DNA of 64,000 bases from Heterodontus francisci (taxonomy: Eukaryota). The stretch is from positions 66,582,862 to 66,646,861 of the forward strand of contig NC_090399.1 in the NCBI RefSeq assembly GCF_036365525.1, given 5' to 3'. Both the position numbers and the translations under genes were made by a program. Below are positions 1,141 to 60,105 of this stretch, piece by piece. The number at the start of each line of letters is the position of its first letter. The stretch's first letter is position 1. The notes under the pieces were generated by a model. It searched no databases. It had not been told where the DNA came from and worked only from the letters and a program-made list of their open reading frames with translations.

Positions 1141-1266
1141 ACGGGACATTCCGAGATACTCCAGGATCTCCAGAAGGGACAAATCTGGGTTTGATTGTTG
1201 GAATTGTTGTTGCTGCCGTCGCTGTGATTGCTCTTGTCATCGGTGCTGTTGTGTGGAAGAGGAGAG
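1141..1266 (+). CDS. Connecting-peptide/transmembrane exon of a type I membrane protein, most likely MHC class I heavy chain
   Basis: Acceptor cttcctcattccccccacAG (1139-1140) and donor GTaggg (1267). The 126-nt phase 1-1 exon encodes (x)GTFRDTPGSPEGTNLGLIVGIVVAAVAVIALVIGAVVWKRR: a ~23-aa hydrophobic helix followed by a WKRR stop-transfer. If the upstream exon ends in G the first residue is D, fitting the W|DG junction after class I alpha3 domains. Too short for the ORF track. Confidence 0.8.
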
Positions 1267-1425
1267 GTAGGGAATGAGGGCAGAATCTGTCACTCTCGGG
1301 TATGAGCAGCTTAAAATATTACAGCACAAGGTCAGAACATTAGACACTTCACTACACAGGTGGGAAACTCACATACAGCCCAGTGATGGACAGGGAGTGA
1401 GGGGACTGGGAGAATGGGATAGGGA

Positions 1426-4400
1426 GTGAGCTGTTTGTAACTGATGTTCCCCCTGTGTGTGTACAGTAAGTTTGTGTGGGTGAGGGGGGGTGAGCTGTTT
1501 GTCACTGAAGTTCCCCCTGTGTGTGTACAGTAAGTTTGTGTGGGTGAGGGGGGAGGGGGGAGCTGTTTGGAACTGAAGTTCCCCCTATGTGTGTACAGTA
1601 AGTTTGTGTGGGTGAGGGGGGGTGGGGTGAGCTGTTTGTAACTGAAGTTCCCCCTGTGTGTGGACAGTAAGTTTGTGTGGGTGAGGGGGGGGGGTGTGAG
1701 CTGTTTGTAACTGACGTTCCCCCTGTGTGTGTACAGTAAGTTTGTGTGGGTGAGGGGGGGGTGAGCTGTTTGTAACTGAAGTTCCCCCTGTGTGTGTACA
1801 GTAAGTTTGTGTGGGTGAGGGGGGGGTGAGCTGTTTGTAACTGAAGTTCCCCCTGTGTGTGTACAGTAAGTTTGTGTGGGTGAGGGGGGGGGGGGTGAGC
1901 TGTTTGTAACTGACGTTCCCCCTGTGTGTGTACAGTAAGTTTGTGTGGGTGAGGGGGGGGTGAGCTGTTTGTAACTGAAGTTCCCCCTGTGTGTGTACAG
2001 TAAGTTTGTGTGGGTGAGGGGGGGGAGTGAGCTGTTTGTAACTGAAGTTACCCCTGTGTGTGTACAGTAAGTTTCTGTGGGTGAGGGGGGGGGGGAAGTG
2101 AGCTGTTTGTAACTGAAGTTCCCCCTGTGTGTGTACAGTAAGTTTGTGTGGGTGAGGGTGCGGGGGGGTGGGGTGAGCTGTTTGTAACTGAAGTTCCCCC
2201 TGTGTGTGTACAGTAAGTTTGTGTGGGTGAGGGTGCGGGGGGTGGGGTGAGCTGTTTGTAACTGAAGTTCCCCCTGTGTGTGTACAGTAAGTTTGTGTGG
2301 GTGAGGGGGGGTGAGCTGTTTGTAACTGAAGTTCCCCATGTGTGTGTACAGTAAGTTTGTGTGGGTGAGGGTGCGGGGGGTGGGGTGAGCTGTTTGTAAC
2401 TGAAGTTCCCCCTGTGTGTGCACAGTAAGTTTGTGTGGGTGAGGTGGGTGGGGGGGGGGGTGAGCTGTTTGTAACTGAAGTTCTCCCTGTGTGTGTACAG
2501 TAAGTTTGTGTGGGTGAGGGGGGGGGGGTGGTGAGCTGTTTGTAACTGAAGTTCCCCCTGTGTGTGTACAGTAAGTTTGTGTGGGTGAGGGGGGGGGTGA
2601 GCTGTTTGTAACTGAAGTTCCCCCTGTGTGTGTACAGTAAGTTTGTGTGGGTGAGGGGGGGGGGGTGAGCTGTTTGTAACTGAAGTTCCCCCTGTGTGTG
2701 TACAGTAAGTTTGTGTGGGTGAGGGTGGGGGGGGGAGGGGTGAGCTGTTTGGAACTGAAGTTCCCCCTGTGTGTGCACAGTAAGTTTGTGTGGGTGAGGT
2801 GGGGGGGGGGGGTGGGTGAGCTGTTTGTAACTGAAGTTCCCCCTGTGTGTGTACAGTGAGTTTGTGTGGGTGAGGGGGGGGGGAGGTGAGCTGTTCGTAA
2901 CTGACGTTCCCCCTGTGTGTGTACAGTGAGTTTGTGTGGGTGAGGGGGGGGGTGAGCTGTTTGTAACTGAAGTTCCCCCTGTGTGTGTACAGTAAGTTTG
3001 TGTTGGTGAGGGGGGTGAGCTGTTTGTAACTGAAGATCCCCTGTGTGTGTACAGTAAGTTTGTGTGGGTGAGGGGGGGTGACCTGTTTGTAACTGAAGTT
3101 CCCCCTGTGTGTGTACAGTACGTTTGTGTGGGTGAGGGGGGGTGAGCTGTTTGTAACTGAAGTTCCCCCTGTGTGTGTACAGTAAGTTTGAGTGGGTGAG
3201 GGGGGGGGGGGGTGAGCTGTTTGAAACTGAAGTTCCCCCCGTGTGTGTACAGTAAGTTTGTGTGGGTGAGGGGGGGGGGGGTGAGCTGTTTGTAACTGAA
3301 GTTCCGCCTGTGTGTGTACAGTACGTTTGTGTGGGTGAGGGGGGGTGAGCTGTTTGTAACTGAAGTTCCCCATGTGTGTGTACAGTAAGTTTGTGTGGGT
3401 GAGGGTGTGGGGGGTGGGGGGTGAGCTGTTTGTAACTGAAGTTCCCCCTGTGTGTGTACAGTAAGTTTGTGTGGGTGAGGGGGGGGGGTGAGCTGTTTGT
3501 AACTGAAGTTCCCCCTGTGTGTGTACAGTAAGTTTGTGTGGGTGTGGGGGGGGGTGAGCTGTTTGTAACTGAAGTTCCCCCTGTGTGTGTACAGTAAGTT
3601 TGTGTGGGTGAGGGGGGGGGTGAGTTGTTTGTAACTGAAGTTCCCCCTGTGTATGCACAGTATGTTTGTGTGGGTGAGGGGGGGTGAGCTGTTTGTAACT
3701 GAAGTTCTTTCTGTGTGTGTACAGTAAGTTTGTGTGGGTGAGGGGGGGGGGGGGGGTGAGCTGTATGTGACTGAAGTTCCCCCTGTGTGTGAACAGTAAG
3801 TTTGTGTGGGTGAGGGGGGGGGGGGGGTGAGCTGTTTGTAACTGAAGTTCCCCCTGTGTGTGTACAGTAAGTTTGTGTGGGTGAGGGTGTGGGGGGGGGG
3901 GTGAGCTGTTTGTAACTAAAGTTCCCCTTGTGTGTGTACAGTAAGTTTGTGTGGGTGAGGGGGGGCGGTGAGCTGTTTGTAACTGAAGTTCCCCCTGTGT
4001 GTGTCCAGTACGTTTGTGTGGGTGAGGGGGGGTGAGCTGTTTGTAACTGAAGTTCCCCCTGTGTGTGAACAGTAAGTTTGTGTGGGTGAGGGGGGGGGAG
4101 GTGAGCTGTTTGTAACTGAAGTTCCCCCTGTGTGTGAACAGTAAGTTTGTGTGGGTGAGGGGGGGGGGGGGGTGAGCTGTTTGTCACTGAAGTTCCCCCT
4201 GTGTGTGTACAGTAAGTTTGTGTGGGTGAGGGGGGGTGAGCTGTTTGTAACTGAAGTTCCCCCTGTGTGTGTACAGTAAGTTTGTGTGGGTGAGGGGGGG
4301 GGGGGGTGAGCTGTTTGTAACTGAAGTTCCCCCTGTGTGTGAACAGTAAGTTTGTGTGGGTGAGGGGGGGGGGGTGAGCTGTTTGTCACTGAAGTTCCCC

Positions 4401-7400
4401 CTGTGTGTGTACAGTAAGTTTGTGTGGGTGAGGGGGGGTGAGCTGTTTGTAACTGAAGTTCCCCCTGTGTGTGTACAGTAAGTTTGTGTGGGCGAGGGGG
4501 GGTGAGCTGTTTGTAACTGAAGTTCCCCCTGTGTGTGCACAGTAAGTTTGTGTTGGTGAGGGGGGGGGGGGGTGAGGGAGCTGTTTGTGACTGAAGTTCC
4601 CCCTGTGTGTGTACAGTGAGTTTGTGTGGGTGAGGGGGGTGAGCTGTTTGTAACTGAAGTTCCCCCTGTGTGTGTACAGTAAGTTTGTGTGGGTGAGCGG
4701 GGGGTGAGCTGTTTGTAACTGAAGTTCCCCCTGTGTGTGTACAGTAAGTTTGTGTGGGTGAGGGGGGGTGAGCTGTTTGTAACTGAAGTTCACCCTGTGT
4801 GTGTACAGTAGGTTTGTGTGGGTGAGGGGGGTTGAGCTGTTTGTAACTGAATTTCCCCCTGTGTGTGTACAGTAAGTTTGTGTGGGTGAGGGGGGGGAGT
4901 GAGCTGTTTGTAACTGAAGTTCCCCCTGTGTGTGTACAGTAAGTTTCTGTGGGTGAGGGGAGGGGGGGAGTGAGCTGTTTGTAACTGAAGTTCCCCCTGT
5001 GTGTGTACAGTAAGTTTGTGTGGGTGAGGGTGCGGGGGGTGGGGTGAGCTGTTTGTAACTGAAGTTCCCCCTGTGTGTGTACAGTAAGTTTGTGTGGGTG
5101 AGGGTGCGGGGGGTGGGGTGAGCTGTTTGTAACTGAAGTTCCCCCTGTGTGTGTACAGTAAGTTTGTGTGGGTGAGGGGGGGGTGAGCTGTTTGTAACTG
5201 AAGTTCCCCCTGTGTGTGTACAGTAAGTTTGTGTGGGTGAGGGTGCGGGGGGTGGGGTGAGCTGTTTGTAACTGAAGTTCCCCCTGTGTGTGCACAGTAA
5301 GTTTGTGTGGGTGAGGTGGGGGTGGGGGGGGGGTGGTGAGCTGTTTGTAACTGAAGTTCCCCCTGTGTGTGTACAGTAAGTTTGTGTGGGTGAGGGGGGG
5401 TGAGCTGTTTGTAACTGAAGTTCCCCCTGTGTGTGTACAGTAAGTTTGTGTGGGTGAGGGGGGGGTGAGCTGTTTGTAACTGAAGTTCCCCCTGTGTGTG
5501 TACAGTAAGTTTGTGTGGGTGAGGGGTGGTGAGCTGTTTGTAACTGAAGTTCCCCCTGTGTGTGTACAGTAAGTTTGTGTGGGTGAGGGGGGGGGTGAGC
5601 TGTTTGTAACTGAAGTTCTCCCTGTGTGTGTACAGTAAGTTTGTGTGGGTGAGGGGGGGGGGGTGGTGAGCTGTTAGTAACTGAAGTTCCCCCTGTGTGT
5701 GTACAGTAAGTTTGTGTGGGTGAGGGGGGGTGAGCTGTTTGTAACTGATGTTCCCCCTGTGTGTGTACAGTAAGTTTGTGTGGGTGAGGGGGGTGGGGTG
5801 AGCTGTTTGGAACTGAAGTTCACCCTGTGTGTGCACAGTAAGTTTGTGTGGGTGAGGTGGGGGGGGGGTGAGCTGTTTGTAACTGAAGTTCCCCCTGTGT
5901 GTGTACAGTGAGTTTGTGTGGGTGAGGGGGGGGGGGGGGGGGTGAGCTGTTTGTAACAGAAGTTCCCCCTGTGTGTGCACAGTAAATTTGTGTTGGTGAG
6001 GGGGGTGAGCTGTTTGTAACTGAAGTTCCCCCTGTGTGTGTACAGTAAGTTTGTGTGGGTGAGGGGGGGTGAGCTGTTTGTAACTGAAGTTCCCCCTGTG
6101 TGTGTACAGTAAGTTTGTGTGGGTGAGTGGGGGGGGGGGTGGGGGTGAGCTGTTTGTAACTGAAGTTCCCCCTGTGTGTGTACAGTAAGTTTGTGTGGGT
6201 GAGGGGGGGGGGGGGGTGAGCTGTTTGAAACTGAAGTTCCCCCCGTGTGTGTACAGTAAGTTTGTGTGGGTGAGGGGGGGGGGGTGAGCTGTTTGTAACT
6301 GAAGTTCCGCCTGTGTGTGTACAGTACGTTTGTGTGGGTGAGGGGGGGTGAGCTGTTTGTAACTGAAGTTCCCCCTGTGTGTGTACAGTAAGTTTGTGTG
6401 GGTGAGGGGGGGGGTGAGCTGTTTGTAACTGAAGTTCCCCCTGTGTGTGTCCAGTACGTTTGTGTGGGTGAGGGGGGGTGAGCTGTTTGTAACTGAAGTT
6501 CCCCCTGTGTGTGTACAGAAAGTTTGTGTGGGTGAGGGGGGGGGGTGAGCTGTTTGTAACTGAGGTTCCCCCTGTGTGTGTACAGTAGGTTTGTGTGGGT
6601 GAGGGGGGGGGGGTAGGCTGTTTGTAACTGAAGTTCCCCCTGTGTGTGAACAGTAAGTTTGTGTGGGTGAGCGGGGGGGGGGGGTGGTGAGCTGTTTGTA
6701 ACTGAAGTTCCCCCTGTGTGTGTACAGTAGGTTTGTGTGGGTGAGGGGGGGGGTGAGCTGTTTGTAACTGAAGTTCCCCCTGTGTGTGAACAGTAAGTTT
6801 GTGTGGGTGAGGGGGGGGGGTGAGTTGTTTGTAACTGAAGTTCCCCCTGTGTGTGCACAGTAAGTTTGTGTGGGTGAGCGGGGGAAGGGGTGAGCTGTTT
6901 GTAACTGAAGTTCTTTCTGTGTGTGTACAGTAAGTTTGTGTGGGTGAGGGGGGGTGAGCTGTTTGTAACTGAAGTACCCCCTGTATGTGTACAGTAAGTT
7001 TGTGTGGGTGAGGGGGGGGGTGAGCTGTTTGTAACTGAAGTTCCCCCTGTGTGTGTACAGTACGTTTGTGTGGTTGAGGGGGGGTGAGCTGTTTGTAACT
7101 GAAGTTCCCCCTGTGTGTGTACAGTAAGTTTGTGTGGGTGAGGGGGGGTGAGCTGTTTGTAACTGAAGTTCCCCCTGTGTGTGTACAGTACGTTTGTGTG
7201 GGTGAGGGGGGGTGAGCTGTTTGTGACTGAAGTTCCCCCTGTGTGTGTACAGTAAGTTTGTGTGGGTGAGGGGGGGTGAGCTGTTTGTAACTGAAGTTCC
7301 CCCTGTGTGTGTACAGTACGTTTGTGTGGGTGAGGGGGGGTGAGCTGTTTGTGACTGAAGTTCCCCCTGTGTGTGTACAGTACGTTTGTGTGGGTGAGGG

Positions 7401-10400
7401 GGGGTGAGCTGCTTGTAACTGAAGTTCCTCCTGTGTGTGTACAGTAAGTTTGTGTGGGTGAGGGGGGGTGAGCTGTTTGTAACTGAAGTTCCCCCTGTGT
7501 GTGTACAGTAAGTTTGTGTGGGTGAGGGTGTGGGGGGGGGGGTGAGCTGTTTGTAACTGACGTTCCCCCTGTGTGTGTACAGTAAGTTTGTGTGGGTGAG
7601 GGGGGGTGAGCTGTTTGTAACTGAAGTTCCCCCTGTGTGTGTACAGTAATTTTGTGTTGGTGAGGGGGGGGGGGGGGGGGTGAGGGAGCTGTTTGTGACT
7701 GAAGTTCCCCCTGTGTGTGTACAGTAAGTTTGTGTGGGTGAGGGGGGGGGGGGGGTGAGCTGTTTGTAACTGAAGTTCCCCCTATGTGTGTACAGTAAGT
7801 TTGTGTGGGTGAGGGGGGGGTGAGCTGTTTGTAACTGAAGTTCCCCCTATGTGTGTACAGTAAGTTTGTGTGGGTGAGGGGGGGTGAGCTGTTTGTAACT
7901 GAAGTTCCTCCTGTGTGTGTACAGTAAGTTTGTGTGGGTGAGGGGGGGTGAGCTGTTTGTAACTGAAGTTCCCCCTGTGTGTGTACAGTGAGTTTGTGTG
8001 GGTGAGGGGGGGGGGGAGGTGAGCTGTTCGTAACTGACTTTCCCCCTGTGTGTGTACAGTGAGTTTGTGTGGGTGAGGGGGGGGGGGGGTGAGCTGTTTG
8101 TAACTGAAGTTCCCCCTGTGTGTGCACAGTAAGTTTGTGTTGGTGAGGGGGGTGAGCTGTTTGTAACTGAAGTTCCCCCTGTGTGTGTACAGTAAGTTTG
8201 TGTGGGTGAGGGGGGGTGAGCTGTTTGTAACTGAAGTTCCCCCTGTGTGTGTACAGTAAGTTTGTGTGGGTGAGTGGGGGGGGGGGGGGTGAGCTGTTTG
8301 TAACTGAAGTTCCGCCTGTGTGTGTACAGTACGTTTGTGTGGGTGAGGGGGGGTGAGCTGTTTGTAACTGAAGTTCCCCCTGTGTGTGTACAGTAAGTTT
8401 GTGTGGGTGAGGGGGGGGGGGGGTGAGCTGTTTGTAACTGAAGTTCCCCCTGTGTGTGTACAGTAAGTTTGTGTGGGTGAGGGGGGGGGGGGGTGAGCTG
8501 TTTGTAACTGAAGTTCCCCCTGTGTGTGTCCAGTACGTTTGTGTGGGTGAGGGGGGGTGAGCTGTTTGTAACTGAAGTTCCCCCTGTGTGTGTACAGAAA
8601 GTTTGTGTGGGTGAGGGGGGGGGGTGAGCTGTTTGTAACTGAGGTTCCCCCTGTGTGTGTACAGTAGGTTTGTGTGGGTGAGGGGGGGGGGGGTAGGCTG
8701 TTTGTAACTGAAGTTCCCCCTGTGTGTGAACAGTAAGTTTGTGTGGGTGAGCGGGGGGGGGGGTGGTGAGCTGTTTGTAACTGAAGTTCCCCCTGTGTGT
8801 GTACAGTAGGTTTGTGTGGGTGAGGGGGGGGGTGAGCTGTTTGTAACTGAAGTTCCCCCTGTGTGTGTACAGTAAGTTTGTGTGGGTGAGGGGGGGGGGT
8901 GAGTTGTTTGTAACTGAAGTTCCCCCTGTGTGTGCACAGTAAGTTTGTGTGGGTGAGCGGGGGAAGGGGTGAGCTGTTTGTAACTGAAGTTCTTTCTGTG
9001 TGTGTACAGTAAGTTTGTGTGGGTGAGGGGGGGTGAGCTGTTTGTAACTGATGTTCCCCCTGTATGTGTACAGTAAGTTTGTGTGGGTGAGGGGGGGGGG
9101 TGAGCTGTTTGTAACTGAAGTTCCCCCTGTGTGTGTACAGTACGTTTGTGTGGTTGAGGGGGGGTGAGCTGTTTGTAACTGAAGTTCCCCCTGTGTGTGT
9201 ACAGTACGTTTGTGTGGGTGAGGGGGGGTGAGCTGTTTGTGACTGAAGTTCCCCCTGTGTGTGTACAGTGCGTTTGTGTGGGTGAGGGGGGGTGAGCTGT
9301 TTGTAACTGAAGTTCCTCCTGTGTGTGTACAGTAAGTTTGTGTGGGTGAGGGGGGGTGAGCTGTTTGTAACTGAAGTTCCCCCTGTGTGTGTACAGTAAG
9401 TTTGTGTGGGTGAGGGTGTGGGGGGGGGGTGAGCTGTTTGTAACTGACGTTCCCCCTGTGTGTGTACAGTAAGTTTGTGTGGGTGAGGGGGGGTGAGCTG
9501 TTTGTAACTGAAGTTCCCCCTGTGTGTGTACAGTAAGTTTGTGTTGGTGAGGGGGGGGGGGGGTGAGGGAGCTGTTTGTGACTGAAGTTCCCCCTGTGTG
9601 TGTACAGTAAGTTTGTGTGGGTGAGGGGGGGGGGTGAGCTGTTTGTAACTGAAGTTCCCCCTATGTGTGTACAGTAAGTTTGTGTGGGTGAGGGGGGGGG
9701 GGGGTGAGCTGTTTGTAACTGAAGTTCCCCCTATGTGTGTACAGTAAGTTTGTGTGGGTGAGGGTGTGGGGGGGGGGGGGGTGAGCTGTTTGTAACTGAC
9801 GTTCCCCCTGTGTGTGTACAGTAAGTTTGTGTGGGTGAGGGGGGGGGGGGTGAGCTGTTTGTAACTGAAGTTCCCCCTGTGTGTGTACAGTAAGTTTGTG
9901 TGGGTGAGGGGGGGGGTTGAGCTGTTTGTAACTGAAGTTCCCCCTATGTGTGTACAGTAAGTTTGTGTGGGTGAGGGTGTGGGGGGGGGGGGGGTGAGCT
10001 GTTTGTAACTGACGTTCCCCCTGTGTGTGTACAGTAAGTTTGTGTGGGTGAGGGGTGGGGGGTGAGCTGTTTGTAACTGAAGTTCCCCCTGTTTGTGTAC
10101 AGTAAGTTTGTGTGGGTGAGGGGGGGTGAGCTGTTTGTAACTGAAGTTCCCCCTGTGTGTGTACAGTAAGTTTGTGTGGGTGAGGGGGGGTGAGCTGTTT
10201 GTAACTGAAGTTCCCCCTGTGTGTGTACAGTAAGTTTGTGTGGGTGAGGGGGGTTGAGCTTTTTATAACTGAATTTCCCCCTGTGTGTGTACAGTAAGTT
10301 TGTGTGGGTGAGGGGGGGGGAGTGAGCTGTTTGTAACTGAAGTTCCCCCTGTGTGTGTACAGTAAGTTTGTGTGGGTGAGGGGGGGTGAGCTGTTTGTAA

Positions 10401-25400: not shown

Positions 25401-28400
25401 GGGGTGGTGAGCTGTTTGTAACTGAAGTTCCCCCTGTGTGTGTACAGTAAGTTTGTGTGGGTGGGGGGGGGGGGGTGAGCTGTTTGTAACTGAAGTTCCC
25501 CCTGTGTGTGTACAGTAAGTTTGTGTGGGTGAGGGGGGGTGAGCTGTTTGTAACTGAAGTTCCCCCTGTGTGTGTACAGTAAGTTTGTGTGGGTGAGGGT
25601 GTGGGTGAGGGGGGGTGAGCTGTTTGTAACTGAAGTTCCCCCTGTGTGTGTACAGTAAGTTTGTGTGGGTGAGGGTGTGGGTGAGGGGGGGGGTGAGCTG
25701 TTTGTAACTGAAGTTCCCCCTGTGTGTGTACAGTAAGTTTGTGTGGGTGGGGGGGGGGTGAGCTGTTTGTAACTGAAGTTCCCCCTGTGTGTGTACAGTA
25801 AGTTTGTGTGGGTGAGGGGGGTGGGGTGTGAGCTGTCTGTAACTGAAGTTCCCCCTGTGTGTGCACAGTAAGTTTGTGTGGGTGAGGGGGGGTGAGCTGT
25901 CTGTAACTGAAGTTCCCCCTGTGTGTGTACAGTACGTTTGTGTGGGTGAGGGGGGGTGAGCTGTTTGTAACTGAAGTTCCCCCTGTGTGTGTACAGTAAG
26001 TTTGTGTGGGTGAGGGGGGGTGAGCTGTTTGTAACTGAAGTTCCCCCTGTGTGTGTACAGTAAGTTTGTGTGGGTGGGGTGGGGTGAGCTGTTTGTAACT
26101 GAAGTTCCCCCTGTGTGTGTACAGTAAGTTTGTGTGGGTGAGGGGGGGTGAGCTGTTTGTAACTTAAGTTCCCCCTGTGTGTGTACAGTAAGTTTGTGTG
26201 GGTGAGGGGGGTGGGGGGTGAGCTGTTTGTAACTGAAGTTCCCCCTGTGTGTGTACAGTAAGTTTGTGTGGGTGAGGGGGGGGGGGGTGAGCTGTTTGTA
26301 ACTGAAGTTCCCCCTGTGTGTGTACAGTAAGTTTGTGTGGGTGGGGGGTTGGTGAGCTGTTTGTAACTGAAGTTCCCCCTGTGTGTGTACAGTAAGTTTG
26401 TGTGGGTGAGGGGGGGTGAGCTGTTCGTAACTGAAGTTCCCCCTGTGTGTGTACAGTAAGTTTGTGTGGGTGAGGGGGGGGGGGGGGTGAGCTGTCTGTA
26501 ACTGAAGTTCCCCCTGTGTGTGTACAGTAAGTTTGTGTGGGTGAGGGGGGTGAGCTGTTTGTAACTGAAGTTCCCCCTGTATGTGTACACTTCGTTTGTG
26601 TGGGTGTGGGGGGGGGTGAGCTGTTTGTGACTGAAGTTCCCCCTGTGTGTGGACAGTAAGTTTGTGTGGGTGAGGTGGGGGGGGGGGGGTGAGCTGTTTG
26701 TAACTGAAGTTCCCCCTGTGTGTGTACAGTAAGTTTGTGTGGGTGAGGTGGGGGGGGAGGTGAGCTGTTTGTAACTGAAGTTCCCCCTGTGTGTGTACAG
26801 TAAGTTTGTGTGGGTGAGGGGGAGGGGGTGAGCTGTTTGTAACTGAAGTTCCCCCTGTGTGTGTACAGTAAGTTTGTGTGGGTGAGGGGGAGGGGGTGAG
26901 CTGTTTGTAACTGAAGTTCCCCCTGTGTGTGTACAGTAAGTTTGTGTGGGTGAGGGGGGGTGAGCTGTTTGTAACTGAAGTTCCCCCTGTGTGTGTACAG
27001 TAAGTTTGTGTGGGTGAGGGGAGGGGGTGAGCTGTTTGTAACTGAAGTTCCCCCTGTGTGTGTACAGTAAGTTTGTGTGGATGAGGGTGTGGGGGGGGGG
27101 GGGGGGGGGTGAGCTGTTTGTAACTGAAGTGCCCCCTGTGTGTGTCCAGTAAGTTTGTGTGGGTGAGGGGGGGTGAGCTGTTTGTAACTGAAGTTCCCCC
27201 TGTGTGTGTACAGTAAGTTTGTGTGTGTGAGGGGGTGGTGAGCTGTTTGTAACTGAAGTTCCCCCTGTGTGTGTACAGTAAGTTTGTGTGGATGAGGGGG
27301 GGAGGGGTGAGCTGTTTGTAACTGAAGTTCCCCCTGTGTGTGTACAGTAAGTTTGTGTGGATGAGGGGGTGGGGTGAGCTGTTTGTAACTGAAGTGCCCC
27401 CTGTGTGTGTACAGTAAGTTTGTGTGGGTGAGGGGGGGGGGGGGTGAGCTGTTTGTAACTGAAGTGCCCCCTGTGTGTGTACAGTAAGTTTGTGTGGGTG
27501 AGGGGGGGGGGTGAGCTGTTTGTAACTGAAGTTCCCCCTGTGTGTGTACAGTAAGTTTGTGTGGGTGAGGGGGGGTGAGCTGTTTGTAACTGAAGTGCCC
27601 CCTGTGTGTGTACAGTAAGTTTGTGTGGGTGAGGGGGGGTGAGCTGTTTGTAACTGAAGTGCCCCCTGTGTGTGTACAGTAAGTTCGTGTGGGTGAGGGG
27701 GTGGGGTGAGCTGTTTGTAACTGAAGTGCCCCCTGTGTGTGTACAGTAGGTTTGTGTGGGTGTGGGGGGGGGGGGGGGGTGAGCTGTTTGTAACTGAAGT
27801 GCCCCCTGTGTGTGTACAGTAAGTTTGTGTGGGTGAGGGGGGGGGTGTGCTGTTTGTAACTGAAGTGCCCCCTGTGTGTGTACAGTAAGTTTGTGTGGGT
27901 GAGGGGGGGTGAGTTGTTTGTAACTGAAGTTCCCCCTGTGTGTGTACATTAAGTTTGTGTGGGTGAGGGAGGTGAGCTGTTTGTAACTGAAGTGCCCCCT
28001 GTGTGTGTACAGTAAGTTTGTGTGGGTGAGGGGGGGTGAGTTGTTTGTATCTGAAGTTCCCCCTTTGTGTGTACATTAAGTTTGTGTGGGTGAGGGGGGG
28101 TGAGCTGTTTGTAACTGAAGTGCCCCCTGTGTGTGTACAGTAAGTTTGTGTGGGTGAGGGGGGGTGAGCTGTTTGTAACTGGAGTTCCCCCTGTGTGTGT
28201 ACAGTAAGTTTGTGTGGGTGAGGGGGGGTGGTGAGCTGTTTGTAACTGAAGTTCCCCCTGTGTGTGTACAGTAAGTTTGTGTGGGTGAGGGGGGGTGAGC
28301 TGTTTGTAACTGAAGTTCCCCCTGTGTGTGTACAGTAAGTTTGTGTGGGTGAGGGGGGGTGAGCTGTTTGTAACTGAAGTGCCCCCTGTGTGTGTCCAGT

Positions 28401-31400
28401 AAGTTTGTGTGGGTGAGGGGGGGTGGTGAGCTGTTTGTAACTGAAGTTCCCCCTGTGTGTGTACAGTAAGTTTGTGTGGGTGAGGGGGGGTGAGCTGTTT
28501 GTAACTGAAGTTCCCCCTGTGTGTGTACAGTAAGTTTGTGTGGGTGAGGGGGGGTGAGCTGTTTGTAACTGAAGTGCCCCCTGTGTGTGTCCAGTAAGTT
28601 TGTGTGGGTGAGGGGGGGGGGGTGAGCTGTTTGTAACTGAAGTTCCCCCCGTGTGTGTACAGTAAGTTTGTGTGGGTGAGGGGGGGTGAGCTGTTTGTAA
28701 CTGAAGTTCCCCCTGTGTGTGTACAGTAAGTTTGTGTGGGTGAGGGGGGGTGTGCTGTTTGTAACTGAAGTTCCCCCTGTGTGTGTACAGTACGTTTGTG
28801 TGGGTGAGGGGGGGTGAGCTGTTTGTAACTGAAGTGCCCCCTGTGTGTGTACAGTAAGTTTGTGTGGGTGAGGGGGGGTGAGCTGTTTGTAACTGAAGTT
28901 CACCCTGTGTGTGTACAGTAAGTTTGTGTGGGTGAGGGGGGGTGAGCTGTTTGTAACTGAAGTTCCCCCTGTGTGTGTACAGTAAGTTTGTGTGGGTGAG
29001 GGGGGGGTGAGCTGTTTGTAACTGAAGTTCCCCCTGTGTGTGTACAGTAAGTTTGTGTGGGTGAGGGGGGGTGAGCTGTTTGTAACTGAAGTGCCCCCTG
29101 TGTGTGTCCAGTAAGTTTGTGTGGGTGAGGGGGTGGGGTGAGCTGTTTGTAACTGAAGTTCCCCCCGTGTGTGTACAGTAAGTTTGTGTGGGTGAGGGGG
29201 GGTGAGCTGTTTGTAACTGAAGTGCCCCCTGTGTGTGTCCAGTAAGTTTGTGTGGGTGAGGGGGGGTGAGCTGTTTGTAACTGAAGTTCCCCCTGTGTGT
29301 GTACAGTAAGTTTGTGTGGGTGAGGGGGGGTGTGCTGTTTGTAACTGAAGTTCCCCCTGTGTGTGTACAGTAAGTTTGTGTGGGTGAGGGGGGGTGAGCT
29401 GTTTGTAACTGAAGTGCCCCCTGTGTGTGTACAGTAAGTTTGTGTGGGTGAGGGGGGGGTGAGCTGTTTGTAACTGAAGTGCCCCCTGTGTGTGTACAGT
29501 AAGTTTGTGTGGGTGAGGGGGGGTGAGCTGTTTGTAACTGAAGTGCCCCCTGTGTGTGTACAGTAAGTTTGTGTGGGTGAGGGGGAGTGAGCTGTTTGTA
29601 ACTGAAGTGCCCCCTGTGTGTGTACAGTAAGTTTGTGTGGGTGAGGGGGGGTGAGCTGTTTGTAACTGAAGTGCCCCCTGTGTGTGTACAGTAAGTTTGT
29701 GTGGGTGAGGGGGGGGTGAGCTGTTTGTAACTGAAGTTCCCCCTGTGTGTGTACAGTAAGTTTGTGTGGGTGAGGGGGTGGGGTGAGCTGTTTGTAACTG
29801 AAGTGCCCCCTGTGTGTGTACAGTAAGTTTGTGTGGGTGTGGGGGGGGGGTGAGCTGTTTGTAACTGAAGTGCCCCCTGTGTGTGTACAGTAAGTTTGTG
29901 TGGGTGAGGGGGGGTGAGTTGTTTGTAACTGAAGTTCCCCCTGTGTGTGTACATTAAGTTTGTGTGGGTGAGGGGGGGTGAGCTGTTTGTAACTGAAGTG
30001 CCCCCTGTGTGTGTACAGTAAGTTTGTGTGGGTGAGGGGGGGTGAGTTGTTTGTAACTGAAGTTCCCCCTGTGTGTGTACATTAAGTTTGTGTGGGTGAG
30101 GGGGGGTGAGCTGTTTGTAACTGAAGTGCCCCCTGTGTTTGTACAGTAAGTTTGTGTGGGTGAGGGGGGGTGAGCTGTTTGTAACTGAAGTTCACCCTGT
30201 GTGTGTACAGTAAGTTTGTGTGGGTGAGGGGGGGTGAGCTGTTTGTAACTGAAGTTCCCCCTGTGTGTGTACAGTAAGTTTGTGTGGGTGAGGGGGGGGT
30301 GAGCTGTTTGTAACTGAAGTTCCCCCTGTGTGTGTACAGTAAGTTTGTGTGGGTGAGGGGGGGTGAGCTGTTTGTAACTGAAGTGCCCCCTGTGTGTGTC
30401 CAGTAAGTTTGTGTGGGTGAGGGGGTGGGGTGAGCTGTTTGTAACTGAAGTTCCCCCCGTGTGTGTACAGTAAGTTTGTGTGGGTGAGGGGGGGTGAGCT
30501 GTTTGTAACTGAAGTGCCCCCTGTGTGTGTCCAGTAAGTTTGTGTGGGTGAGGGGGGGTGAGCTGTTTGTAACTGAAGTTCCCCCTGTGTGTGTACAGTA
30601 AGTTTGTGTGGGTGAGGGGGGGTGTGCTGTTTGTAACTGAAGTTCCCCCTGTGTGTGTACAGTAAGTTTGTGTGGGTGAGGGGGGGTGAGCTGTTTGTAA
30701 CTGAAGTGCCCCCTGTGTGTGTACAGTAAGTTTGTGTGGGTGAGGGGGGGTGAGCTGTTTGTAACTGAAGTTCCCCCTGTGTGTGTACAGTAAGTTTGTG
30801 TGGGTGAGGGGGGGTGAGCTGTTTGTAACTGAAGTGCCCCCTGTGTGTGTACAGTAAGTTTGTGTGGGTGAGGGGGGGTGAGCTGTTTGTAACTGAAGTG
30901 CCCCCTGTGTGTGTACAGTAAGTTTGTGTGGGTGAGGGGGGGTGAGCTGTTTGTAACTGAAGTGCCCCCTGTGTGTGTACAGTAAGTTTGTGTGGGTGAG
31001 GGGGGGTGAGCTGTTTGTAACTGAAGTGCCCCCTGTGTGTGTACAGTAAGTTTGTGTGGGTGAGGGGGGGTGAGCTGTTTGTAACTGAAGTGCCCCCTGT
31101 GTGTGTACAGTAAGTTTGTGTGGGTGAGGGGGGGTGAGCTGTTTGTAACTGAAGTTCCCCCTGTGTGTGTACAGTAAGTTTGTGTGGGTGAGGGGGTGGG
31201 GTGAGCTGTTTGTAACTGAAGTGCCCCCTGTGTGTGTACAGTAAGTTTGTGTGGGTGTGGGGGGGGGGTGAGCTGTTTGTAACTGAAGTGCCCCCTGTGT
31301 GTGTACAGTAAGTTTGTGTGGGTGAGGGGGGGTGAGTTGTTTGTAACTGAAGTTCCCCCTGTGTGTGTACATTAAGTTTGTGTGGGTGAGGGGGGGTGAG

Positions 31401-34068
31401 CTGTTTGTAACTGAAGTGCCCCCTGTGTGTGTACAGTAAGTTTGTGTGGGTGAGGGGGGGGTGAGTTGTTTGTAACTGAAGTTCCCCCTGTGTGTGTACA
31501 TTAAGTTTGTGTGGGTGAGGGGGGGTGAGCTGTTTGTAACTGAAGTGCCCCCTGTGTGTGTACAGTAAGTTTGTGTGGGTGAGGGGGGGTGAGCTGTTTG
31601 TAACTGAAGTTCCCCCTGTGTGTGTACAGTAAGTTTGTGTGGGTGAGGGGGGGTGAGCTGTTTGTAACTGAAGTTCACCCTGTGTATGTACAGTAAGTTT
31701 GTGTGGGTGAGGGGGGGTGAGCTGTTTGTAACTGAAGTTCACCCTGTGTGTGTACAGTAAGTTTGTGTGGGTGAGGGGGGGTTGAGCTGTTTGTAACTGG
31801 AGTTCCCCCTGTGTGTGTACAGTAAGTTTGTGTGGGTGAGGGGGGGTGGTGAGCTGTTTGTAACTGAAGTTCCCCCTGTGTGTGTACAGTAAGTTTGTGT
31901 GGGTGAGGGGGGGTGAGCTGTTTGTAACTGAAGTTCCCCCTGTGTGTGTACAGTAAGTTTGTGTGGGTGAGGGGGGGTGAGCTGTTTGTAACTGAAGTGC
32001 CCCCTGTGTGTGTCCAGTAAGTTTGTGTGGGTGAGGGGGGGGTGAGCTGTTTGTAACTGATGTTCCCCCCGTGTGTGTACAGTAAGTTTGTGTGGGTGAG
32101 GGGGGGTGAGCTGTTTGTAACTGAAGTGCCCCCTGTGTGTTTCCAGTAAGTTTGTGTGGGTGAGGGGGGGTGAGCTGTTTGTAACTGAAGTTCCCCCTGT
32201 GTGTGTACAGTAAGTTTGTGTGGGTGAGGGGGGGTGTGCTGTTTGTAACTGAAGTTCCCCCTGTGTGTGTACAGTAAGTTTGTGTGGGTGAGGGGGGGTG
32301 AGCTGTTTGTAACTGAAGTGCCCCCTGTGTGTGTACAGTAAGTTTGTGTGGGTGAGGGGGGGTGAGCTGTTTGTAACTGAAGTTCACCCTGTGTGTGTAC
32401 AGTAAGTTTGTGTGGGTGAGGGGGGGTGAGCTGTTTGTAACTGAAGTTCCCCCTGTGTGTGTACAGTAAGTTTGTGTGGGTGAGGGGGGGTGAGCTGTTT
32501 GTAACTGAAGTTCCCCCTGTGTGTGTACAGTAAGTTTGTGTGGGTGAGGGGGGGTGAGCTGTTTGTAACTGAAGTGCCCCCTGTGTGTGTCCAGTAAGTT
32601 TGTGTGGGTGAGGGGGTGGGGTGAGCTGTTTGTAACTGAAGTTCCCCCCGTGTGTGTACAGTAAGTTTGTGTGGGTGAGGGGGGGTGAGCTGTTTGTAAC
32701 TGAAGTGCCCCCTGTGTGTGTCCAGTAAGTTTGTGTGGGTGAGGGGGGGTGAGCTGTTTGTAACTGAAGTTCCCCCTGTGTGTGTACAGTAAGTTTGTGT
32801 GGGTGAGGGGGGGTGTGCTGTTTGTAACTGAAGTTCCCCCTGTGTGTGTACAGTAAGTTTGTGTGGGTGAGGGGGGGTGAGCTGTTTGTAACTGAAGTGC
32901 CCCCTGTGTGTGTACAGTAAGTTTGTGTGGGTGAGGGGGGGTGAGCTGTTTGTAACTGAAGTTCCCCCTGTGTGTGTACAGTAAGTTTGTGTGGGTGAGG
33001 GGGGGTGAGCTGTTTGTAACTGAAGTTCCCCCTGTGTGTGTACAGTAAGTTTGTGTGGGTGAGGGGGGGTGAGCTGTTTGTAACTGAAGTGCCCCCTGTG
33101 TGTGTCCAGTAAGTTTGTGTGGGTGAGGGGGGTGGTGAGCTGTTTGTAACTGAAGTTCCCCCTGTGTGTGTACAGTAAGTTTGTGTGGGTGAGGGGGGGT
33201 GAGCTGTTTGTAACTGATGTGCCCCCTGTGTGTGTCCAGTAAGTTTGTGTGGGTGAGGGGGGGTGAGCTGTTTGTAACTGAAGTTCCCCCTGTGTGTGTA
33301 CAGTAAGTTTGTGTGGGTGAGGGGGGGGGGGTGAGCTGTTTGTAACTGAAGTTCCCCCTGTGTGTGTACAGTAAGTTTGTGTGGGTGAGGGGGTGGGGTG
33401 AGCTGTTTGTAACTGAAGTGCCCCCTGTGTGTGTACAGTAAGTTTGTGTGGGTGAGGGGGGGGGGGGGGGGTGAGCTGTTTGTAACTGAAGTGCCCCCTG
33501 TGTGTGTACAGTAATTTTGTGTGGGTGAGGGGGGTGAGTTGTTTGTAACTGAAGTTCCCCCTGTGTGTGTACATTAAGTTTGTGTGGGTGAGGGGGGGTG
33601 AGCTGTTTGTAACTGAAGTGCCCCCTGTGTGTGTACAGTAAGTTTGTGTGGGTGAGGTGGGGTGAGCTGTTTGTAACTGAAGTGCCCCCTGTGTGTGTAC
33701 AGTAAGTTTGTGTGGGTGAGGTGGGGTGAGCTGTTTGTAACTGAAGTGCCCCCTGTGTGTGTACAGTAAGTTTGTGTGGGTGAGGGGGGGTGAGCTGTTT
33801 GTAACTGAAGTTCCCCCTGTGTGTGTACAGTAAGTTTGTGTGGGTGAGGGGGGGTGAGCTGTTTGTAACTGAAGTGCCCACTGTGTGTGTCCAGTAAGTT
33901 TGTGTGGGTGAGGGGGTGTGAGCTGTTTGTAACTGAAGTTCCCCCTGTGTGTGTACAGTAAGTTTGTGTGGGTGAGGGGGGTGAGCTGTTTGTAACTGAA
34001 GTTCCCCCTGTGTGTGTACAGTAAGTTTGTGTGGGTGAGGGGGGGTGAGCTGTTTGTAACTGAAGTTC
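1426..34068 (+). repeat. Giant intronic G-rich minisatellite, unit TGAGCTGTTTGTAACTGAAGTTCCCCCTGTGTGTGTACAGTAAGTTTGTGTGGGTGA(G)n; 64 bp when n=7; ~490-500 copies
   Basis: Period 64 read directly (AGTAAG at 30661, 30725, 30789). The G-run varies from ~6 to >15. Copy number estimated as ~32.6 kb / ~66 bp. Consensus composition on the + strand is 25 G, 21 T, 10 A, 8 C. Confidence 0.99.
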
Positions 34069-34086
34069 TCTCTGTTTCTTGTGTAG

Positions 34087-34122
34087 GAGGAAAGATGAAA
34101 TCTGGTTACAGCCCAGCAAATC
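34087..34122 (+). CDS. First cytoplasmic-tail exon (MHC class I exon 6-like, Tyr motif)
   Basis: Acceptor ttctctctgtttcttgtgtAG (34085-34086), a 36-nt phase 1-1 exon, then donor GTa at 34123 just before the N gap. Spliced to the TM exon it reads ...WKRR-GGKMKSGYSPAN. GYxxA matches the conserved YXXA motif of MHC class I cytoplasmic tails. Confidence 0.8.
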
Positions 34123-34125
34123 GTA

Positions 34126-34359
34126 NNNNNNNNNNNNNNNNNNNNNNNNNNNNNNNNNNNNNNNNNNNNNNNNNNNNNNNNNNNNNNNNNNNNNNNNNNN
34201 NNNNNNNNNNNNNNNNNNNNNNNNNNNNNNNNNNNNNNNNNNNNNNNNNNNNNNNNNNNNNNNNNNNNNNNNNNNNNNNNNNNNNNNNNNNNNNNNNNNN
34301 NNNNNNNNNNNNNNNNNNNNNNNNNNNNNNNNNNNNNNNNNNNNNNNNNNNNNNNNNNN
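34126..34359. other. Assembly gap (234 N)
   Basis: Run of N characters. Confidence 1.
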
Positions 34360-34457
34360 CTTTGTCTTTGTCTGTGTTTCTCTCTCACCCTCTCTGTTAC
34401 TCTTTCTCTCACTTTCCCTCTGTCTCCCTCTCTCTCTCTCTCTCTGCCTCTCTACAG
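34360..34457 (+). repeat. CT-rich low-complexity/polypyrimidine tract ending in a candidate acceptor (ctctacAG)
   Basis: Imperfect (CT)n run immediately after the gap, ending in CAG at 34455-34457. Confidence 0.8.
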
Positions 34458-34508
34458 AACATTCACCATGTTGTAAAATATCTGAGGGACATAAATCTTT
34501 CCTTTTAG

Positions 34509-34543
34509 CACCTGCAGAAAGAGGAGAATCGAACTTGGCCTGA
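34509..34543 (+). CDS. Terminal coding exon of the MHC class I-like gene
   Basis: Acceptor aatctttccttttAG (34507-34508). Phase 1 continuation gives (P)PAERGESNLA then TGA at 34541-34543, resembling the xDRGES-type tail ends I recall for shark class I. It lies beyond the gap, so linkage to the upstream exons is inferred. Confidence 0.65.
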
Positions 34544-35061
34544 GATATGAAGTCCCTCACTGGAGTGACAGGGTGTGAGACTGAAGAACAGAATACTGAT
34601 TCAGATTACCTTGGACACGGAATACTCTGCCCTGTTCTGTAAACGTGTTGAAGCAAAGAACTGACTTAAACATGGTCCAGTGTAGAAACGGAAGATTGAG
34701 AGTATGAGACGCCCCCTCCCATTCCCTCGCTGCCTGAGGCCGTATCAGCAGTGAGAAGTGAACACATCCCCGAGGAGACGCTGGGTTTGTGCATTCTCAC
34801 AACAGTGCAGCGATGACACGGCTGGCGGCCATTTTACATAATGGAGACGTCCGTCGCCCCAATCACGTGGTGGGAGCGGCAGTCGAAACTATATTCACGA
34901 CATCATCTGGTGTTGGAGCTGGAGTCTAATGTAATATCGGCTTGTTACTGGGCAGAATATGTAAATAGTCTGGGAACACCAGCACAGGAAGTGATGTAAT
35001 CAAATCTGTATATAAACTCGTGTCATGTGTAAGTGGAAGCCGTAGATGCAGTACACGTGTA

Positions 35062-35109
35062 AATAAACTCCTGTTATCCTAACCGAAACCTTCGATATTC
35101 TGGAATAAA
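35062..35109 (+). terminator. Candidate polyadenylation signals AATAAA (35062-35067 and 35104-35109)
   Basis: Two canonical hexamers ~520 and ~560 nt after the stop codon. Confidence 0.55.
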
Positions 35110-48007: not shown

Positions 48008-48009
48008 GA

Positions 48010-58879: not shown

Positions 58880-60105
58880 CCTCACTCTGGGATTGATTCT
58901 CCCTCCTGGTTACTGGATCACAGTCTGTTTTTACCCAGAGTCTTCCCTCTGTCAAACAATTTCCCTTTTTGTCTGAAATCTCCTTCAGAACCTGCTGGTG
59001 AATCTGGTAAATGGAGCAGAGGGACTCCTTCTACTGAGATCTCAGAGTTCACATCTACACATCTTCACTCAATTGTTTCTCAGCACCAGTAACAAGTTTC
59101 AAATGAAGTAAAGAAAACAACAATATGTTTAATTGTGGAACCAATTTTCCACAGAAAAATTACTTGTGTTACGGGGGTGTGTGGAATTTTTATAACACGG
59201 GACAGGGGCCTCAGAAAGCAGTAAGACTCCAGCTAAATGGACACTACTGGAAAATCTCTCACATTGTGAAATCCAGTTTAGATATCTTAGTTCTTTATCT
59301 TTGGTCCTTACCTTATCTTACACTATATTTATTCATTGGTCATTACTATTTCATCTGTTTTAAGTTATTTAAATTATACACACTAACTTGCATCGAGCAC
59401 TAAAGGACTAAACAAAATTTTAAACATTTACTGTCTCACGCTTACACAACCCAGTACAAGTGTTAAAGACAAAAAGCATTTCTTCTCCCCTCTGCACTGA
59501 ATTCCCACTCTCACTAAATTCTCACCTTCCCTCTCAGTTTCCGTTGCAATCTGTGGTTACACTGTGTGTTCCAGCAGAAATCTTTTACTTTTATATCCCA
59601 CTGAATCACATCCAAGTTACAACTGTTCAGTCAGTTTCAGCACATTTACCCCCTGTTCAGGCAATTACTTCCATCTGATTGACTGTTAACTGTTCATCTG
59701 ACTTACACTGTTTCCTGTTCACTGTTCACCTGAATAAACTGTTCACTGTTATCCTGATTTATACTGTTCACTGTACACCTGATTTATACTGTTCATTGTT
59801 AGCCTGAATAAACTGTTCACCCGTCACCTGATTTATACTGTTCACCTGACTTATACTGTTCACCGGTCACCTGACTTGCAGTTGTAAAAGTCTGATGTGA
59901 AATTCTAAATGTTCAGAGCAAATTTCAGTCTGACCTCCTCACCCACCACTTATTAAACATGAAACTTCCCACTCGGTTAATGTTCAGATCTGTGATTACA
60001 CTGTGCTGTATCTGGGAGCTGATCCCATTCTTTAAATTTACAGGGATCTGATCCCATTCCTTTAATTCGCTGAGATCAGATCGCGTTCCTTTAATTTTCT
60101 GGGAT

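What the first reader, a model, noticed from the sequence alone, without database searches (positions are those of the whole stretch)
1141..34543. Hidden MHC class I-like gene whose TM and cytoplasmic exons are separated by a 32.8-kb single-minisatellite intron
Seen: three short phase-compatible exons splice to ...GTNLGLIVGIVVAAVAVIALVIGAVVWKRR|GGKMKSGYSPAN|PPAERGESNLA*, and >99% of the intron between the first two is one tandem repeat. Established: MHC class I heavy-chain genes have a TM exon followed by small phase-1 cytoplasmic exons, and the YXXA tyrosine motif controls endocytosis and cross-presentation. This intron is normally hundreds of bp to a few kb. Inference: a shark class I gene (lineage unknown) in which array length may affect transcription time, inclusion of the tail exon and haplotype stability.
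Basis: partly seen in the sequence, partly recalled or inferred. Interest (0 to 1): 0.8.

Follow-up and report, generated by a model that had tools for sequence, protein, structure and literature searches.

The report
Shark MHC gene, giant minisatellite intron
The membrane-anchor and tail exons of a horn shark non-classical MHC class I gene really are separated by a 32.8-kb intron made almost entirely of one 64-bp repeat, and RNA shows it is spliced out cleanly. The gene and this exact protein end are already in the public annotation, so it is a curiosity rather than a hidden gene.

Summary
There are three phase-1 exons: 1141-1266, 34087-34122 and 34509-34543 plus the 3'UTR. A 64-bp x 487 array at 1422-34075 fills 99.5% of the first intron.

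RNA contigs from four runs of one sample show both junctions, 1266^34087 and 34122^34509. The N gap therefore lies inside an intron and does not touch the reading frame.

The three exons match, at 100%, the C-terminus of RefSeq XP_067865033.1. This is Heterodontus francisci "MHC class I-related gene protein-like" isoform X4, 369 aa, with MHC_I and C1-set domains whose exons lie upstream of the window. The gene is therefore not hidden.

On a tree it falls in a shark-only class I clade separate from classical UAA, which fits the UBA type. It has replaced four of eight peptide-end-binding residues and lost the conserved serine-rich C-terminus, but keeps the tail tyrosine.

Nearly every repeat unit carries acceptor-like and donor-like motifs and is G-rich on the sense strand, yet the contigs show only the canonical junction.

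Array length could not be checked with spanning reads.

This scan had already noted satellite-filled introns in neighbouring class I genes of this genome.

The parts
1141..1266 (+). Connecting-peptide/transmembrane exon (126 nt, phase 1 to phase 1) of the class I gene
   Evidence: Read and translated. 100% tblastn match to residues 305-346 of RefSeq isoforms X1-X4. 68-75% identical to the TM regions of catshark and horn shark class I proteins.
1267..34086 (+). Intron between the TM and first cytoplasmic exon, 32,820 nt, GT..AG
   Evidence: In all four runs the contigs carry 28 loose nt identical to window 1237-1264, followed by the shared AG and then 34087 onward. That is junction 1266^34087.
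1422..34075 (+). 64-bp minisatellite of 487 units, G-rich on the sense strand. Domain A runs from 1428 to about 26,800, with variable poly-G and units of about 67-68 bp. Domain B runs from about 26,900 to 34,075, with uniform 64-bp units and a T/G variant mix.
   Evidence: TRF. Unit split. Variant map and motif counts. GC skew +0.52 to +0.57 throughout. The longest exact internal duplicate is only 611 bp.
34087..34122 (+). Cytoplasmic exon 1 (36 nt, phase 1), holding the conserved tail tyrosine (GYSPAN)
   Evidence: Read. 100% match to P0055 residues 347-358. Covered by RNA contigs with no differences. The tyrosine column is conserved across shark class I.
34126..34359 (.). Run of 234 N inside the cyt1-cyt2 intron
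   Evidence: Bridged by the RNA junction 34122^34509 in four runs. Not filled.
34509..35073 (+). Last exon: 35 coding nt (34509-34543, stop TGA 34541-34543) plus the 3'UTR. AATAAA lies at 35062-35067.
   Evidence: Read. 100% match to P0055 residues 360-369. RNA contigs cover 34509-35073 with no differences, and depth is zero beyond 35080.
58989..59092 (+). Alternative last coding exon of annotated isoform X2 (a 34-aa tail that replaces the conserved class I tail). Near-copies lie at 45286-45381 and 50047-50142.
   Evidence: 100% tblastn match to P0019 residues 347-380. Acceptor ttcag|AA read. This rests on annotation only; I have no RNA check of it.

Best explanation
This is the 3' end of an already annotated, expressed horn shark (Heterodontus francisci) non-classical MHC class I gene of the shark-only lineage that fits UBA. 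Its leader and alpha1-alpha3 exons lie upstream of the window. The intron between the TM exon and the first tail exon has been inflated to 32.8 kb by in-place amplification of one 64-bp unit, probably by replication slippage and unequal exchange. The array runs in register into the real acceptor. Its last 22 unit bases sit at -40 to -19 of the true 3' splice site, where a branch site is expected.

Shown: the intron is transcribed and removed precisely, giving a membrane-anchored protein whose short tail keeps the tyrosine motif.

Inferred: the array is a tolerated passenger rather than a working part. The true acceptor probably wins over roughly 460 look-alikes for two reasons. It has a longer T-rich tract followed by AG|G, and a real exon with its own donor lies behind it. 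The look-alikes have a C-rich tract plus (GT)n and AG|T, and could only define 13-30-nt pseudo-exons.

The cost is about 33 kb of extra transcription, roughly 8-16 min at commonly quoted Pol II speeds (inference).
For: The exons, phases and array were read and measured directly. RNA contigs from four runs show 34122^34509 and carry the end of the TM exon directly before 34087. Depth is zero in the flanking intron and past the poly(A) site, so the runs hold RNA rather than DNA.

The TM peptide finds shark class I proteins in a scan of 1.84 billion representatives. The cluster of P0019 holds four RefSeq isoforms, and X4 (P0055) matches the three exons at 100%.

P0055 scores 146.9 bits on Pfam MHC_I and 52.3 bits on C1-set. 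Its best solved relative is the shark class I chain 6lup_A, E = 1.8e-79.

The tree places it in a 96/97-supported shark-only clade apart from the UAA clade. The alignment shows Y7F, Y59F, K146E and Y171F equivalents and a shortened C-terminus.

The array has 253 distinct units, two domains, diverged multi-kb internal duplications and no exact repeat longer than 611 bp. That is what a real, old array looks like.
Against: Array length was not checked with spanning reads. All RNA comes from one sample and one study, and from assembled contigs, which cannot show rare isoforms or levels. The contigs stop 30 nt into the TM exon, so the alpha3-TM junction and the upstream exons rest on the RefSeq model alone. 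No reference sequence explicitly named UBA was in my hits, so the lineage name is inferred. Homology of the unit's acceptor-like part to the real polypyrimidine tract is not significant (p about 0.38 against shuffles).
Confidence: 0.85

Rival explanations
1. The array is a working regulatory element. It is a 32.6-kb transcribed repeat, G-rich on the sense strand and prone to G-quadruplexes and R-loops. It would slow or pause RNA polymerase and, through its hundreds of splice-site look-alikes, set the balance between the canonical tail (isoform X4) and the far-downstream tails (X1-X3).
For: GC skew is +0.52 to +0.57 across the whole array. There are 137 canonical G4 motifs on the sense strand and none on the other. 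There are 414 GTAAGT, 431 GGTGAGC and 448 GGTGAGG motifs, and 460 units carry an acceptor-like tract. The annotation lists three isoforms that skip both tail exons.
Against: I have no evidence of pausing, of R-loops, or of any link between the array and isoform choice. The RNA contigs show only the canonical junction. Units vary freely in length and sequence (253 variants), which looks like drift. According to this scan's own unchecked notes, arrays of other sequence fill neighbouring introns.
Confidence: 0.07
2. The array length, or part of it, is an assembly artefact. The real intron is much shorter, or differs between haplotypes collapsed into this sequence.
For: Long tandem arrays are hard to assemble. 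An N run lies only 51 bp downstream. No spanning reads were examined.
Against: The array is not built of identical blocks. The longest exact internal repeat is 611 bp, units average about 95% identity, and there are two distinct domains with diverged higher-order duplications. Accurate long reads can resolve that. RNA proves that the TM and tail exons lie in one transcription unit, so a false join of two paralogues is very unlikely: the 30 nt seen encode this gene's VVWKRR end, not the paralogue's VALKRR end.
Confidence: 0.1
3. The gene is a decaying class I copy whose canonical tail is on its way out. The transcripts seen are leftover expression of a gene without a function.
For: Four of eight peptide-end-binding residues are replaced. 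The C-terminal ESSSNSSAxA motif, present in the other eight shark sequences of the alignment, is cut down to ESNLA. The gene's terminal branch is rather long at 0.45. The alternative tails lie in a tandemly duplicated block beside transposon ORFs.
Against: The 369-aa reading frame is intact, with all domains scoring far above Pfam cut-offs. The cysteines, the N-glycosylation site, and the tryptophan and tyrosine of the T143/W147/Y159 positions are kept. It is transcribed and correctly spliced. Loss of these anchor residues is the usual mark of working non-classical class I molecules.
Confidence: 0.08

Closest known systems
RefSeq XP_067865033.1, Heterodontus francisci 'major histocompatibility complex class I-related gene protein-like isoform X4' (P0055)
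   Same: Residues 305-369 are encoded at 100% by the three window exons.
   Different: Nothing differs in the protein. The annotation record does not describe what fills the intron.
Shark non-classical class I lineage UBA (multicopy, MHC-linked, derived from UAA; PMC10751288, PMC12562908)
   Same: The clade is shark-only and spans squalomorph and galeomorph sharks. It is separate from but close to UAA and has several copies in horn shark. Its members share an alpha3 insertion, the WDGTFR connecting peptide and the GYSPAN tail.
   Different: No sequence named UBA was in my comparison, and the defining papers (J Immunol 1997 and 2021) are not held. This copy is more derived than its dogfish, sixgill-type and sawshark relatives, with four anchor residues and the serine-rich end lost.
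Satellite-filled gigantic introns of Drosophila Y-linked genes kl-3 and kl-5 (PMC6508621, PMC11207136)
   Same: An intron of an expressed protein-coding gene made almost entirely of tandem repeat, which must be transcribed through and spliced out.
   Different: Those introns are megabase-sized, made of simple satellites, in germline genes with a dedicated expression programme. This one is 33 kb, has a 64-bp unit that itself carries splice-site look-alikes, and sits in an immune gene.
Conserved cytoplasmic tyrosine (Y320) of mammalian MHC class I (PMC12518231, PMC2532750)
   Same: A single tyrosine in the small exon after the TM exon, in a G/S-Y-x-x-A context. It is kept in this gene and in every shark sequence aligned.
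   Different: Its role in trafficking and cross-presentation is shown only in mammals. This tail also lacks the serine cluster that normally follows.

Membership tests
MHC class I heavy chain | Alpha1-alpha2 peptide-binding superdomain (Pfam PF00129) | tested here: met
   P0055 scores 146.9 bits against a cut-off of 28.3. The exons lie upstream of the window, so this rests on the RefSeq model whose last 65 residues match the window at 100%.
MHC class I heavy chain | Membrane-proximal C1-set Ig domain (alpha3) | tested here: met
   PF07654 scores 52.3 bits against a cut-off of 21 in P0055. I did not see this domain in genomic DNA myself.
MHC class I heavy chain | Separate TM exon followed by short phase-1 cytoplasmic exons | tested here: met
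   Exons of 126, 36 and 35 (coding) nt, all phase 1. Both junctions appear in RNA contigs.
MHC class I heavy chain | Conserved tail tyrosine | tested here: met
   The GYSPAN tyrosine column is shared by all nine shark sequences aligned.
Classical (class Ia) MHC class I | Eight conserved residues that hold the peptide ends (equivalents of Y7, Y59, Y/R84, T143, K146, W147, Y159, Y171; the numbering comes from my own knowledge) | tested here: not met
   This gene has F, F, R, T, E, W, Y, F, so four of the eight are changed. Horn shark and banded houndshark UAA keep all eight.
Shark UBA lineage (class Ib) | Groups with named UBA reference sequences to the exclusion of UAA, UDA and UEA | tested here: inconclusive
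   It groups in a 96/97-supported shark-only clade apart from UAA. None of the rows carries a UBA name, and UDA and UEA references were not included.
Shark UBA lineage (class Ib) | Lies in the multicopy cluster flanked by c4 and rxrb (PMC10751288) | not testable with these tools
Satellite-filled giant intron | Intron made mostly of one tandem repeat, transcribed and spliced | tested here: met
   99.5% of the intron is one array. The junction appears in RNA, and repeat-unit contigs are present in the RNA runs.

The most novel reading that the evidence does not exclude
The array is not a passenger. It would be a long, transcribed tandem repeat, G-rich on the sense strand, with one AGCT per unit, forming R-loops or G-quadruplexes. 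In this it would resemble an antibody switch region (a resemblance from memory, not tested). It would either time transcription and steer the choice between the conserved tail and the far-downstream tails, or act as a recombination hotspot that reshuffles class I haplotypes. If so, the satellite-filled introns seen in several horn shark class I genes would be a shared regulatory or diversifying device.
Probability: 0.07. Interest if true: 0.65.

Novelty: new member of a known kind. Interest (0 to 1): 0.35.

Why it matters
The gene itself is ordinary and already annotated.

What is unusual is a natural experiment in splice-site choice. The spliceosome must pair a modest donor (GAG|GTAGGG) with an acceptor 32.8 kb away. 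On the way it passes about 460 acceptor-like tracts and more than 1,200 donor-like motifs, including 414 perfect GTAAGT cores. The contigs show that it does so.

Together with the scan's notes on neighbouring genes, this suggests that horn shark class I genes are unusually prone to satellite growth inside their introns. That matters for three reasons:
- assembling and annotating shark MHC regions;
- typing these genes from genomic DNA;
- asking whether array length varies between haplotypes.

I found no paper in the held library that describes this. The two key shark class Ib papers are not held.

Tried and rejected
1. Pfam on the 41-aa TM peptide gave no family, as expected for a TM segment.

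2. Two word-index searches with the C-terminal 68 residues of relatives returned only the queries themselves. The target was a non-representative member of a 90% cluster. It was found through a whole-protein search and the cluster listing.

3. I tested the idea that the 64-bp unit is a shrunken copy of the TM exon end plus its donor. The best local alignment (16/20 nt) is no better than shuffles (27 of 300 reach it), so I rejected it.

4. I tested the idea that the unit's acceptor-like tract is a recognisable copy of the real polypyrimidine tract, and that the 5' flank is homologous to the unit tail. Neither is significant (p about 0.38 and 0.14). I kept only the shared 22-mer and the matching AG position.

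I therefore could not fetch the upstream exons, the paralogous loci on the 114-kb and 275-kb scaffolds, or the catshark orthologue's intron.

I resent it with a longer piece.

7. Almeida et al. 2020 and 2021 are not held.

8. The look-up of earlier findings by sequence was blank.

9. The exons were translated and compared separately. Identity with isoform X4 was shown by laying the database protein on the window.

Full report
**What is in the sequence**

Direct reading and translation confirm three exons on the + strand.
- Exon 1141-1266 follows the acceptor ...ccccccacag and ends GAG|gtaggg. Its first two bases complete a codon and its last base opens one (phase 1 in, phase 1 out). Between them it encodes GTFRDTPGSPEGTNLGLIVGIVVAAVAVIALVIGAVVWKRR, a connecting peptide, a hydrophobic span and a basic stop-transfer end.
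- Exon 34087-34122 (36 nt) is also phase 1 on both sides and holds GKMKSGYSPAN.
- Exon 34509 onward gives PAERGESNLA and a TGA at 34541-34543.

TRF finds a single array at 1422-34075 with period 64, 486.5 copies and 90% matches. That is 32,654 of the 32,820 bases of the intron 1267-34086, or 99.5%. Splitting on a conserved 17-mer gives 487 units of 58-82 bp (mode 64), of which 253 are distinct.

**The N run**

The only N run is 34126-34359. It begins three bases after the GT of the cyt1 donor and ends 150 bases before the cyt2 acceptor. I tested continuity across it with RNA, not by looking for its letters (next section). It lies inside an intron, so the reading frame does not depend on it. 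Only that intron's length (386 nt as written) is an estimate.

**Expression and splicing**

A run search with the last exon and 3'UTR found four runs of one sample and one study that hold 77-96% of its words.

In each run one contig of 529-631 nt covers 34085-34122 and then 34509 onward with no differing letters. That is a GT..AG skip of 386 nt.

Each of these contigs also carries 28 further letters before 34085. These letters are identical to window 1237-1264. The next two letters (AG) fit both the end of the TM exon (1265-1266) and the acceptor (34085-34086). So the contigs read TM-exon end directly joined to 34087, which is junction 1266^34087.

The 30 nt encode the VVWKRR end of this gene, not the VALKRR end of the horn shark paralogues.

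Depth is zero over 34156-34491 and beyond 35080. The runs therefore hold spliced RNA, not genomic DNA or a retrocopy with flanks. The longest contig ends at 35073, just after the AATAAA at 35062-35067.

Short contigs of repeat-unit sequence are also present in two runs, which is consistent with the array being transcribed. Contigs cannot give levels or exclude rare isoforms.

**What gene it is**

The 41-aa TM peptide was scored against 1.84 billion representative proteins. It found four hits. Three are shark MHC class I proteins at 70-75% identity: a small-spotted catshark protein and two horn shark proteins. The fourth is a repetitive, unrelated protein.

A whole-protein search with the catshark relative returned P0019, a horn shark protein on a 74.5-Mb contig that contains the window's TM exon exactly. 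Its 90% cluster holds four RefSeq isoforms, XP_067865030 to XP_067865033, named [quoted passage not shown].

Isoform X4 (P0055, 369 aa) ends with the TM exon followed by exactly the two tail exons. tblastn places residues 305-346, 347-358 and 360-369 at 100% on 1140-1265, 34086-34121 and 34511-34540. Residues 1-304 have no match in the window, so the leader and the alpha1-alpha3 exons lie upstream.

P0055 scores 146.9 bits on Pfam MHC_I and 52.3 bits on C1-set. Its best solved relative is the shark class I chain 6lup_A (E = 1.8e-79).

I did not search a joined model of my own.

**Lineage and class**

I built a maximum-likelihood tree of 27 class I proteins. It puts the gene in a clade with support 96/97. 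The other members come from Heptranchias, Squalus, Pristiophorus, two Scyliorhinus species and another horn shark copy. No ray or chimaera sequence is in this clade.

The other cartilaginous-fish clade holds the classical UAA sequences of Triakis and horn shark and the ray sequences.

Published overviews describe a multicopy, shark-wide, UAA-derived non-classical family, UBA (PMC12562908, PMC10751288). This fits, but no row in my tree carries that name and the defining papers are not held. The name is therefore inferred.

In the alignment the gene keeps the domain cysteines, the N-glycosylation site and the clade's WDGTFR connecting peptide. At the eight positions that hold the peptide ends in classical molecules it reads F, F, R, T, E, W, Y, F. 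The horn shark and houndshark UAA rows, and the Squalus, Heptranchias and Pristiophorus rows, keep Y, Y, R, T, K, W, Y, Y. The position numbering is from my own knowledge.

The tail tyrosine is kept. The ESSSNSSAxA end, shared by the other eight shark sequences in that alignment, is cut to ESNLA. This is a derived class Ib molecule, not a pseudogene: the frame is open and the RNA is spliced.

**The array**

GC content is 0.52-0.545 and GC skew is +0.52 to +0.57 along the whole array. The sense (non-template) strand is therefore strongly G-rich.

There are two domains. From 1428 to about 26,800, units average 67-68 bp, poly-G runs are 4-17 long, and only the T variant occurs at one marker site. 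From about 26,900 to 34,075, units are almost all 64 bp with a G7 run, and T and G variants are mixed.

Internal duplications at offsets of 1.3, 2.2, 3.8 and 7.3 kb have diverged. The longest exact internal repeat is 611 bp, and core identity between units is about 95%. This is the texture of a real, evolving array rather than an assembler loop. It does not prove the length.

Motif counts in the array:

| Motif | Count |
|---|---|
| GTAAGT | 414 |
| ACAGTAAGT | 388 |
| GGTGAGC | 431 |
| GGTGAGG | 448 |
| exact CCCCCTGTGTGTGTACAG | 320 |
| units with an acceptor-like tract | 460 |
| canonical G-quadruplex motifs, sense strand | 137 |
| canonical G-quadruplex motifs, other strand | 0 |

The array ends in register with the real acceptor. 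The last 22 unit bases (GAGCTGTTTGTAACTGAAGTTC) sit at -40 to -19. The true AG lies where each unit has its CAG, give or take one base. The tracts themselves are no more alike than shuffled controls (p about 0.38). The resemblance of the unit to the TM exon end is also not significant. That the unit grew from the intron's own 3' end is therefore plausible but not shown.

**How it most likely works**

Shown: the intron is transcribed and removed at the canonical sites.

Inferred: the array is a tolerated expansion. The real acceptor probably wins for two reasons. Its tract is longer and T-rich and is followed by AG|G, and a true exon with a donor lies behind it. The look-alikes have C5 plus (GT)n and AG|T, and could only define pseudo-exons of 13 nt or about 23-35 nt.

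By a simple count against the nine-base donor consensus, the decoy ACA|GTAAGT (7 of 9) is no weaker than the real GAG|GTAGGG (6 of 9). Context rather than donor strength must therefore decide.

The extra 33 kb should add roughly 8-16 minutes of transcription at commonly quoted polymerase speeds.

**Other isoforms**

Isoforms X1-X3 join the same TM exon to a 34-aa tail instead. The exon for X2 is at 58989-59092, behind a good acceptor, 57.7 kb from the donor. Near-copies lie at 45286-45381 and 50047-50142. The X1 and X3 tails have no exact copy in the window.

These exons lie in a tandemly duplicated block with GIY-YIG (Penelope-type) and other transposon ORFs. They show that skipping the conserved tail is at least predicted. 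Nothing ties this to the array.

**Comparison with earlier notes and the literature**

This scan's own unchecked notes report several related things in this genome:
- satellite-filled introns in a class I gene 60 kb downstream;
- another such gene 122 kb downstream;
- arrays at exon borders of one class I gene in the preceding window;
- a class I first exon 113.5 kb upstream with a satellite-filled first intron, which may be this gene's start.

I treated these as leads and tested none of them except the CAGTAAGT motif count.

In the held literature I found no description of satellite-filled introns in shark MHC genes. The nearest described case is the satellite-containing gigantic introns of Drosophila Y-linked genes (PMC6508621, PMC11207136).

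**Limits**

Upstream exons, paralogous loci and orthologous introns could not be fetched.
- The RNA comes from one sample.
- Array length is unverified.

**Verdict**

The functional ideas are untested. It is a striking example of a known kind of thing in an already annotated gene.

Noticed in passing
window 44000-64000 (exon copies at 45286-45381, 50047-50142, 58988-59089): A tandemly duplicated block carries three near-copies of a 34-aa coding exon that RefSeq uses as the alternative last exon of isoforms X1-X3 of the class I gene. Only the 58989-59092 copy matches an isoform (X2) exactly. The X1 and X3 tails have no exact copy in the window.
   Followed up: partly
window 44524-45177 (-) and 58178-58885 (-): ORFs with a weak GIY-YIG match (21.4 bits, just under the 22.6-bit cut-off) lie beside the alternative exons. 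They look like Penelope-type retroelement ends.
   Followed up: partly
window 39149-42374, 48010-49952, 53453-56080, 62205-63162: Four arrays of one 33-bp repeat (29-97 copies each), C-rich on the + strand (GC skew about -0.65). That is the opposite skew to the 64-bp array.
   Followed up: no
window 35281-36752: A 70-bp x 21 tandem array (95% matches) starts about 200 bp after the gene's poly(A) site.
   Followed up: no
window 38298-38834 (-): An ORF with a clear DDE_Tnp_4 (Harbinger-type transposase) domain, 67.9 bits.
   Followed up: partly
window 47025-47783, 52633-53073, 61217-61825 (+): Repeated ORFs with weak GDSL-lipase/OSK-like matches (31.3 and 22.6 bits, both under their cut-offs). 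They may be the esterase-type ORF1 of a LINE.
   Followed up: partly
window 34927-34972 (inside the 3'UTR): Several other RNA contigs share only this stretch of about 45 nt and run on into unrelated sequence on both sides. The 3'UTR therefore contains a short element that is also present in other transcripts, and several contigs break there.
   Followed up: no
P0026 (XP_067865029.1), same 74.5-Mb contig, not in the window: The RefSeq protein numbered just before this gene's isoforms is a UAA-type class I protein that keeps all eight classical anchor residues and is sister to the published horn shark UAA. It may be the neighbouring gene.
   Followed up: no
P0004/P0005 (horn shark paralogue on a 275-kb scaffold): These RefSeq models begin with a translated tandem repeat (a repeated TAHRPRTRGRGITQSELD motif) in place of a normal leader and alpha1. 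This suggests satellites disturb gene models of other class I copies as well.
   Followed up: no
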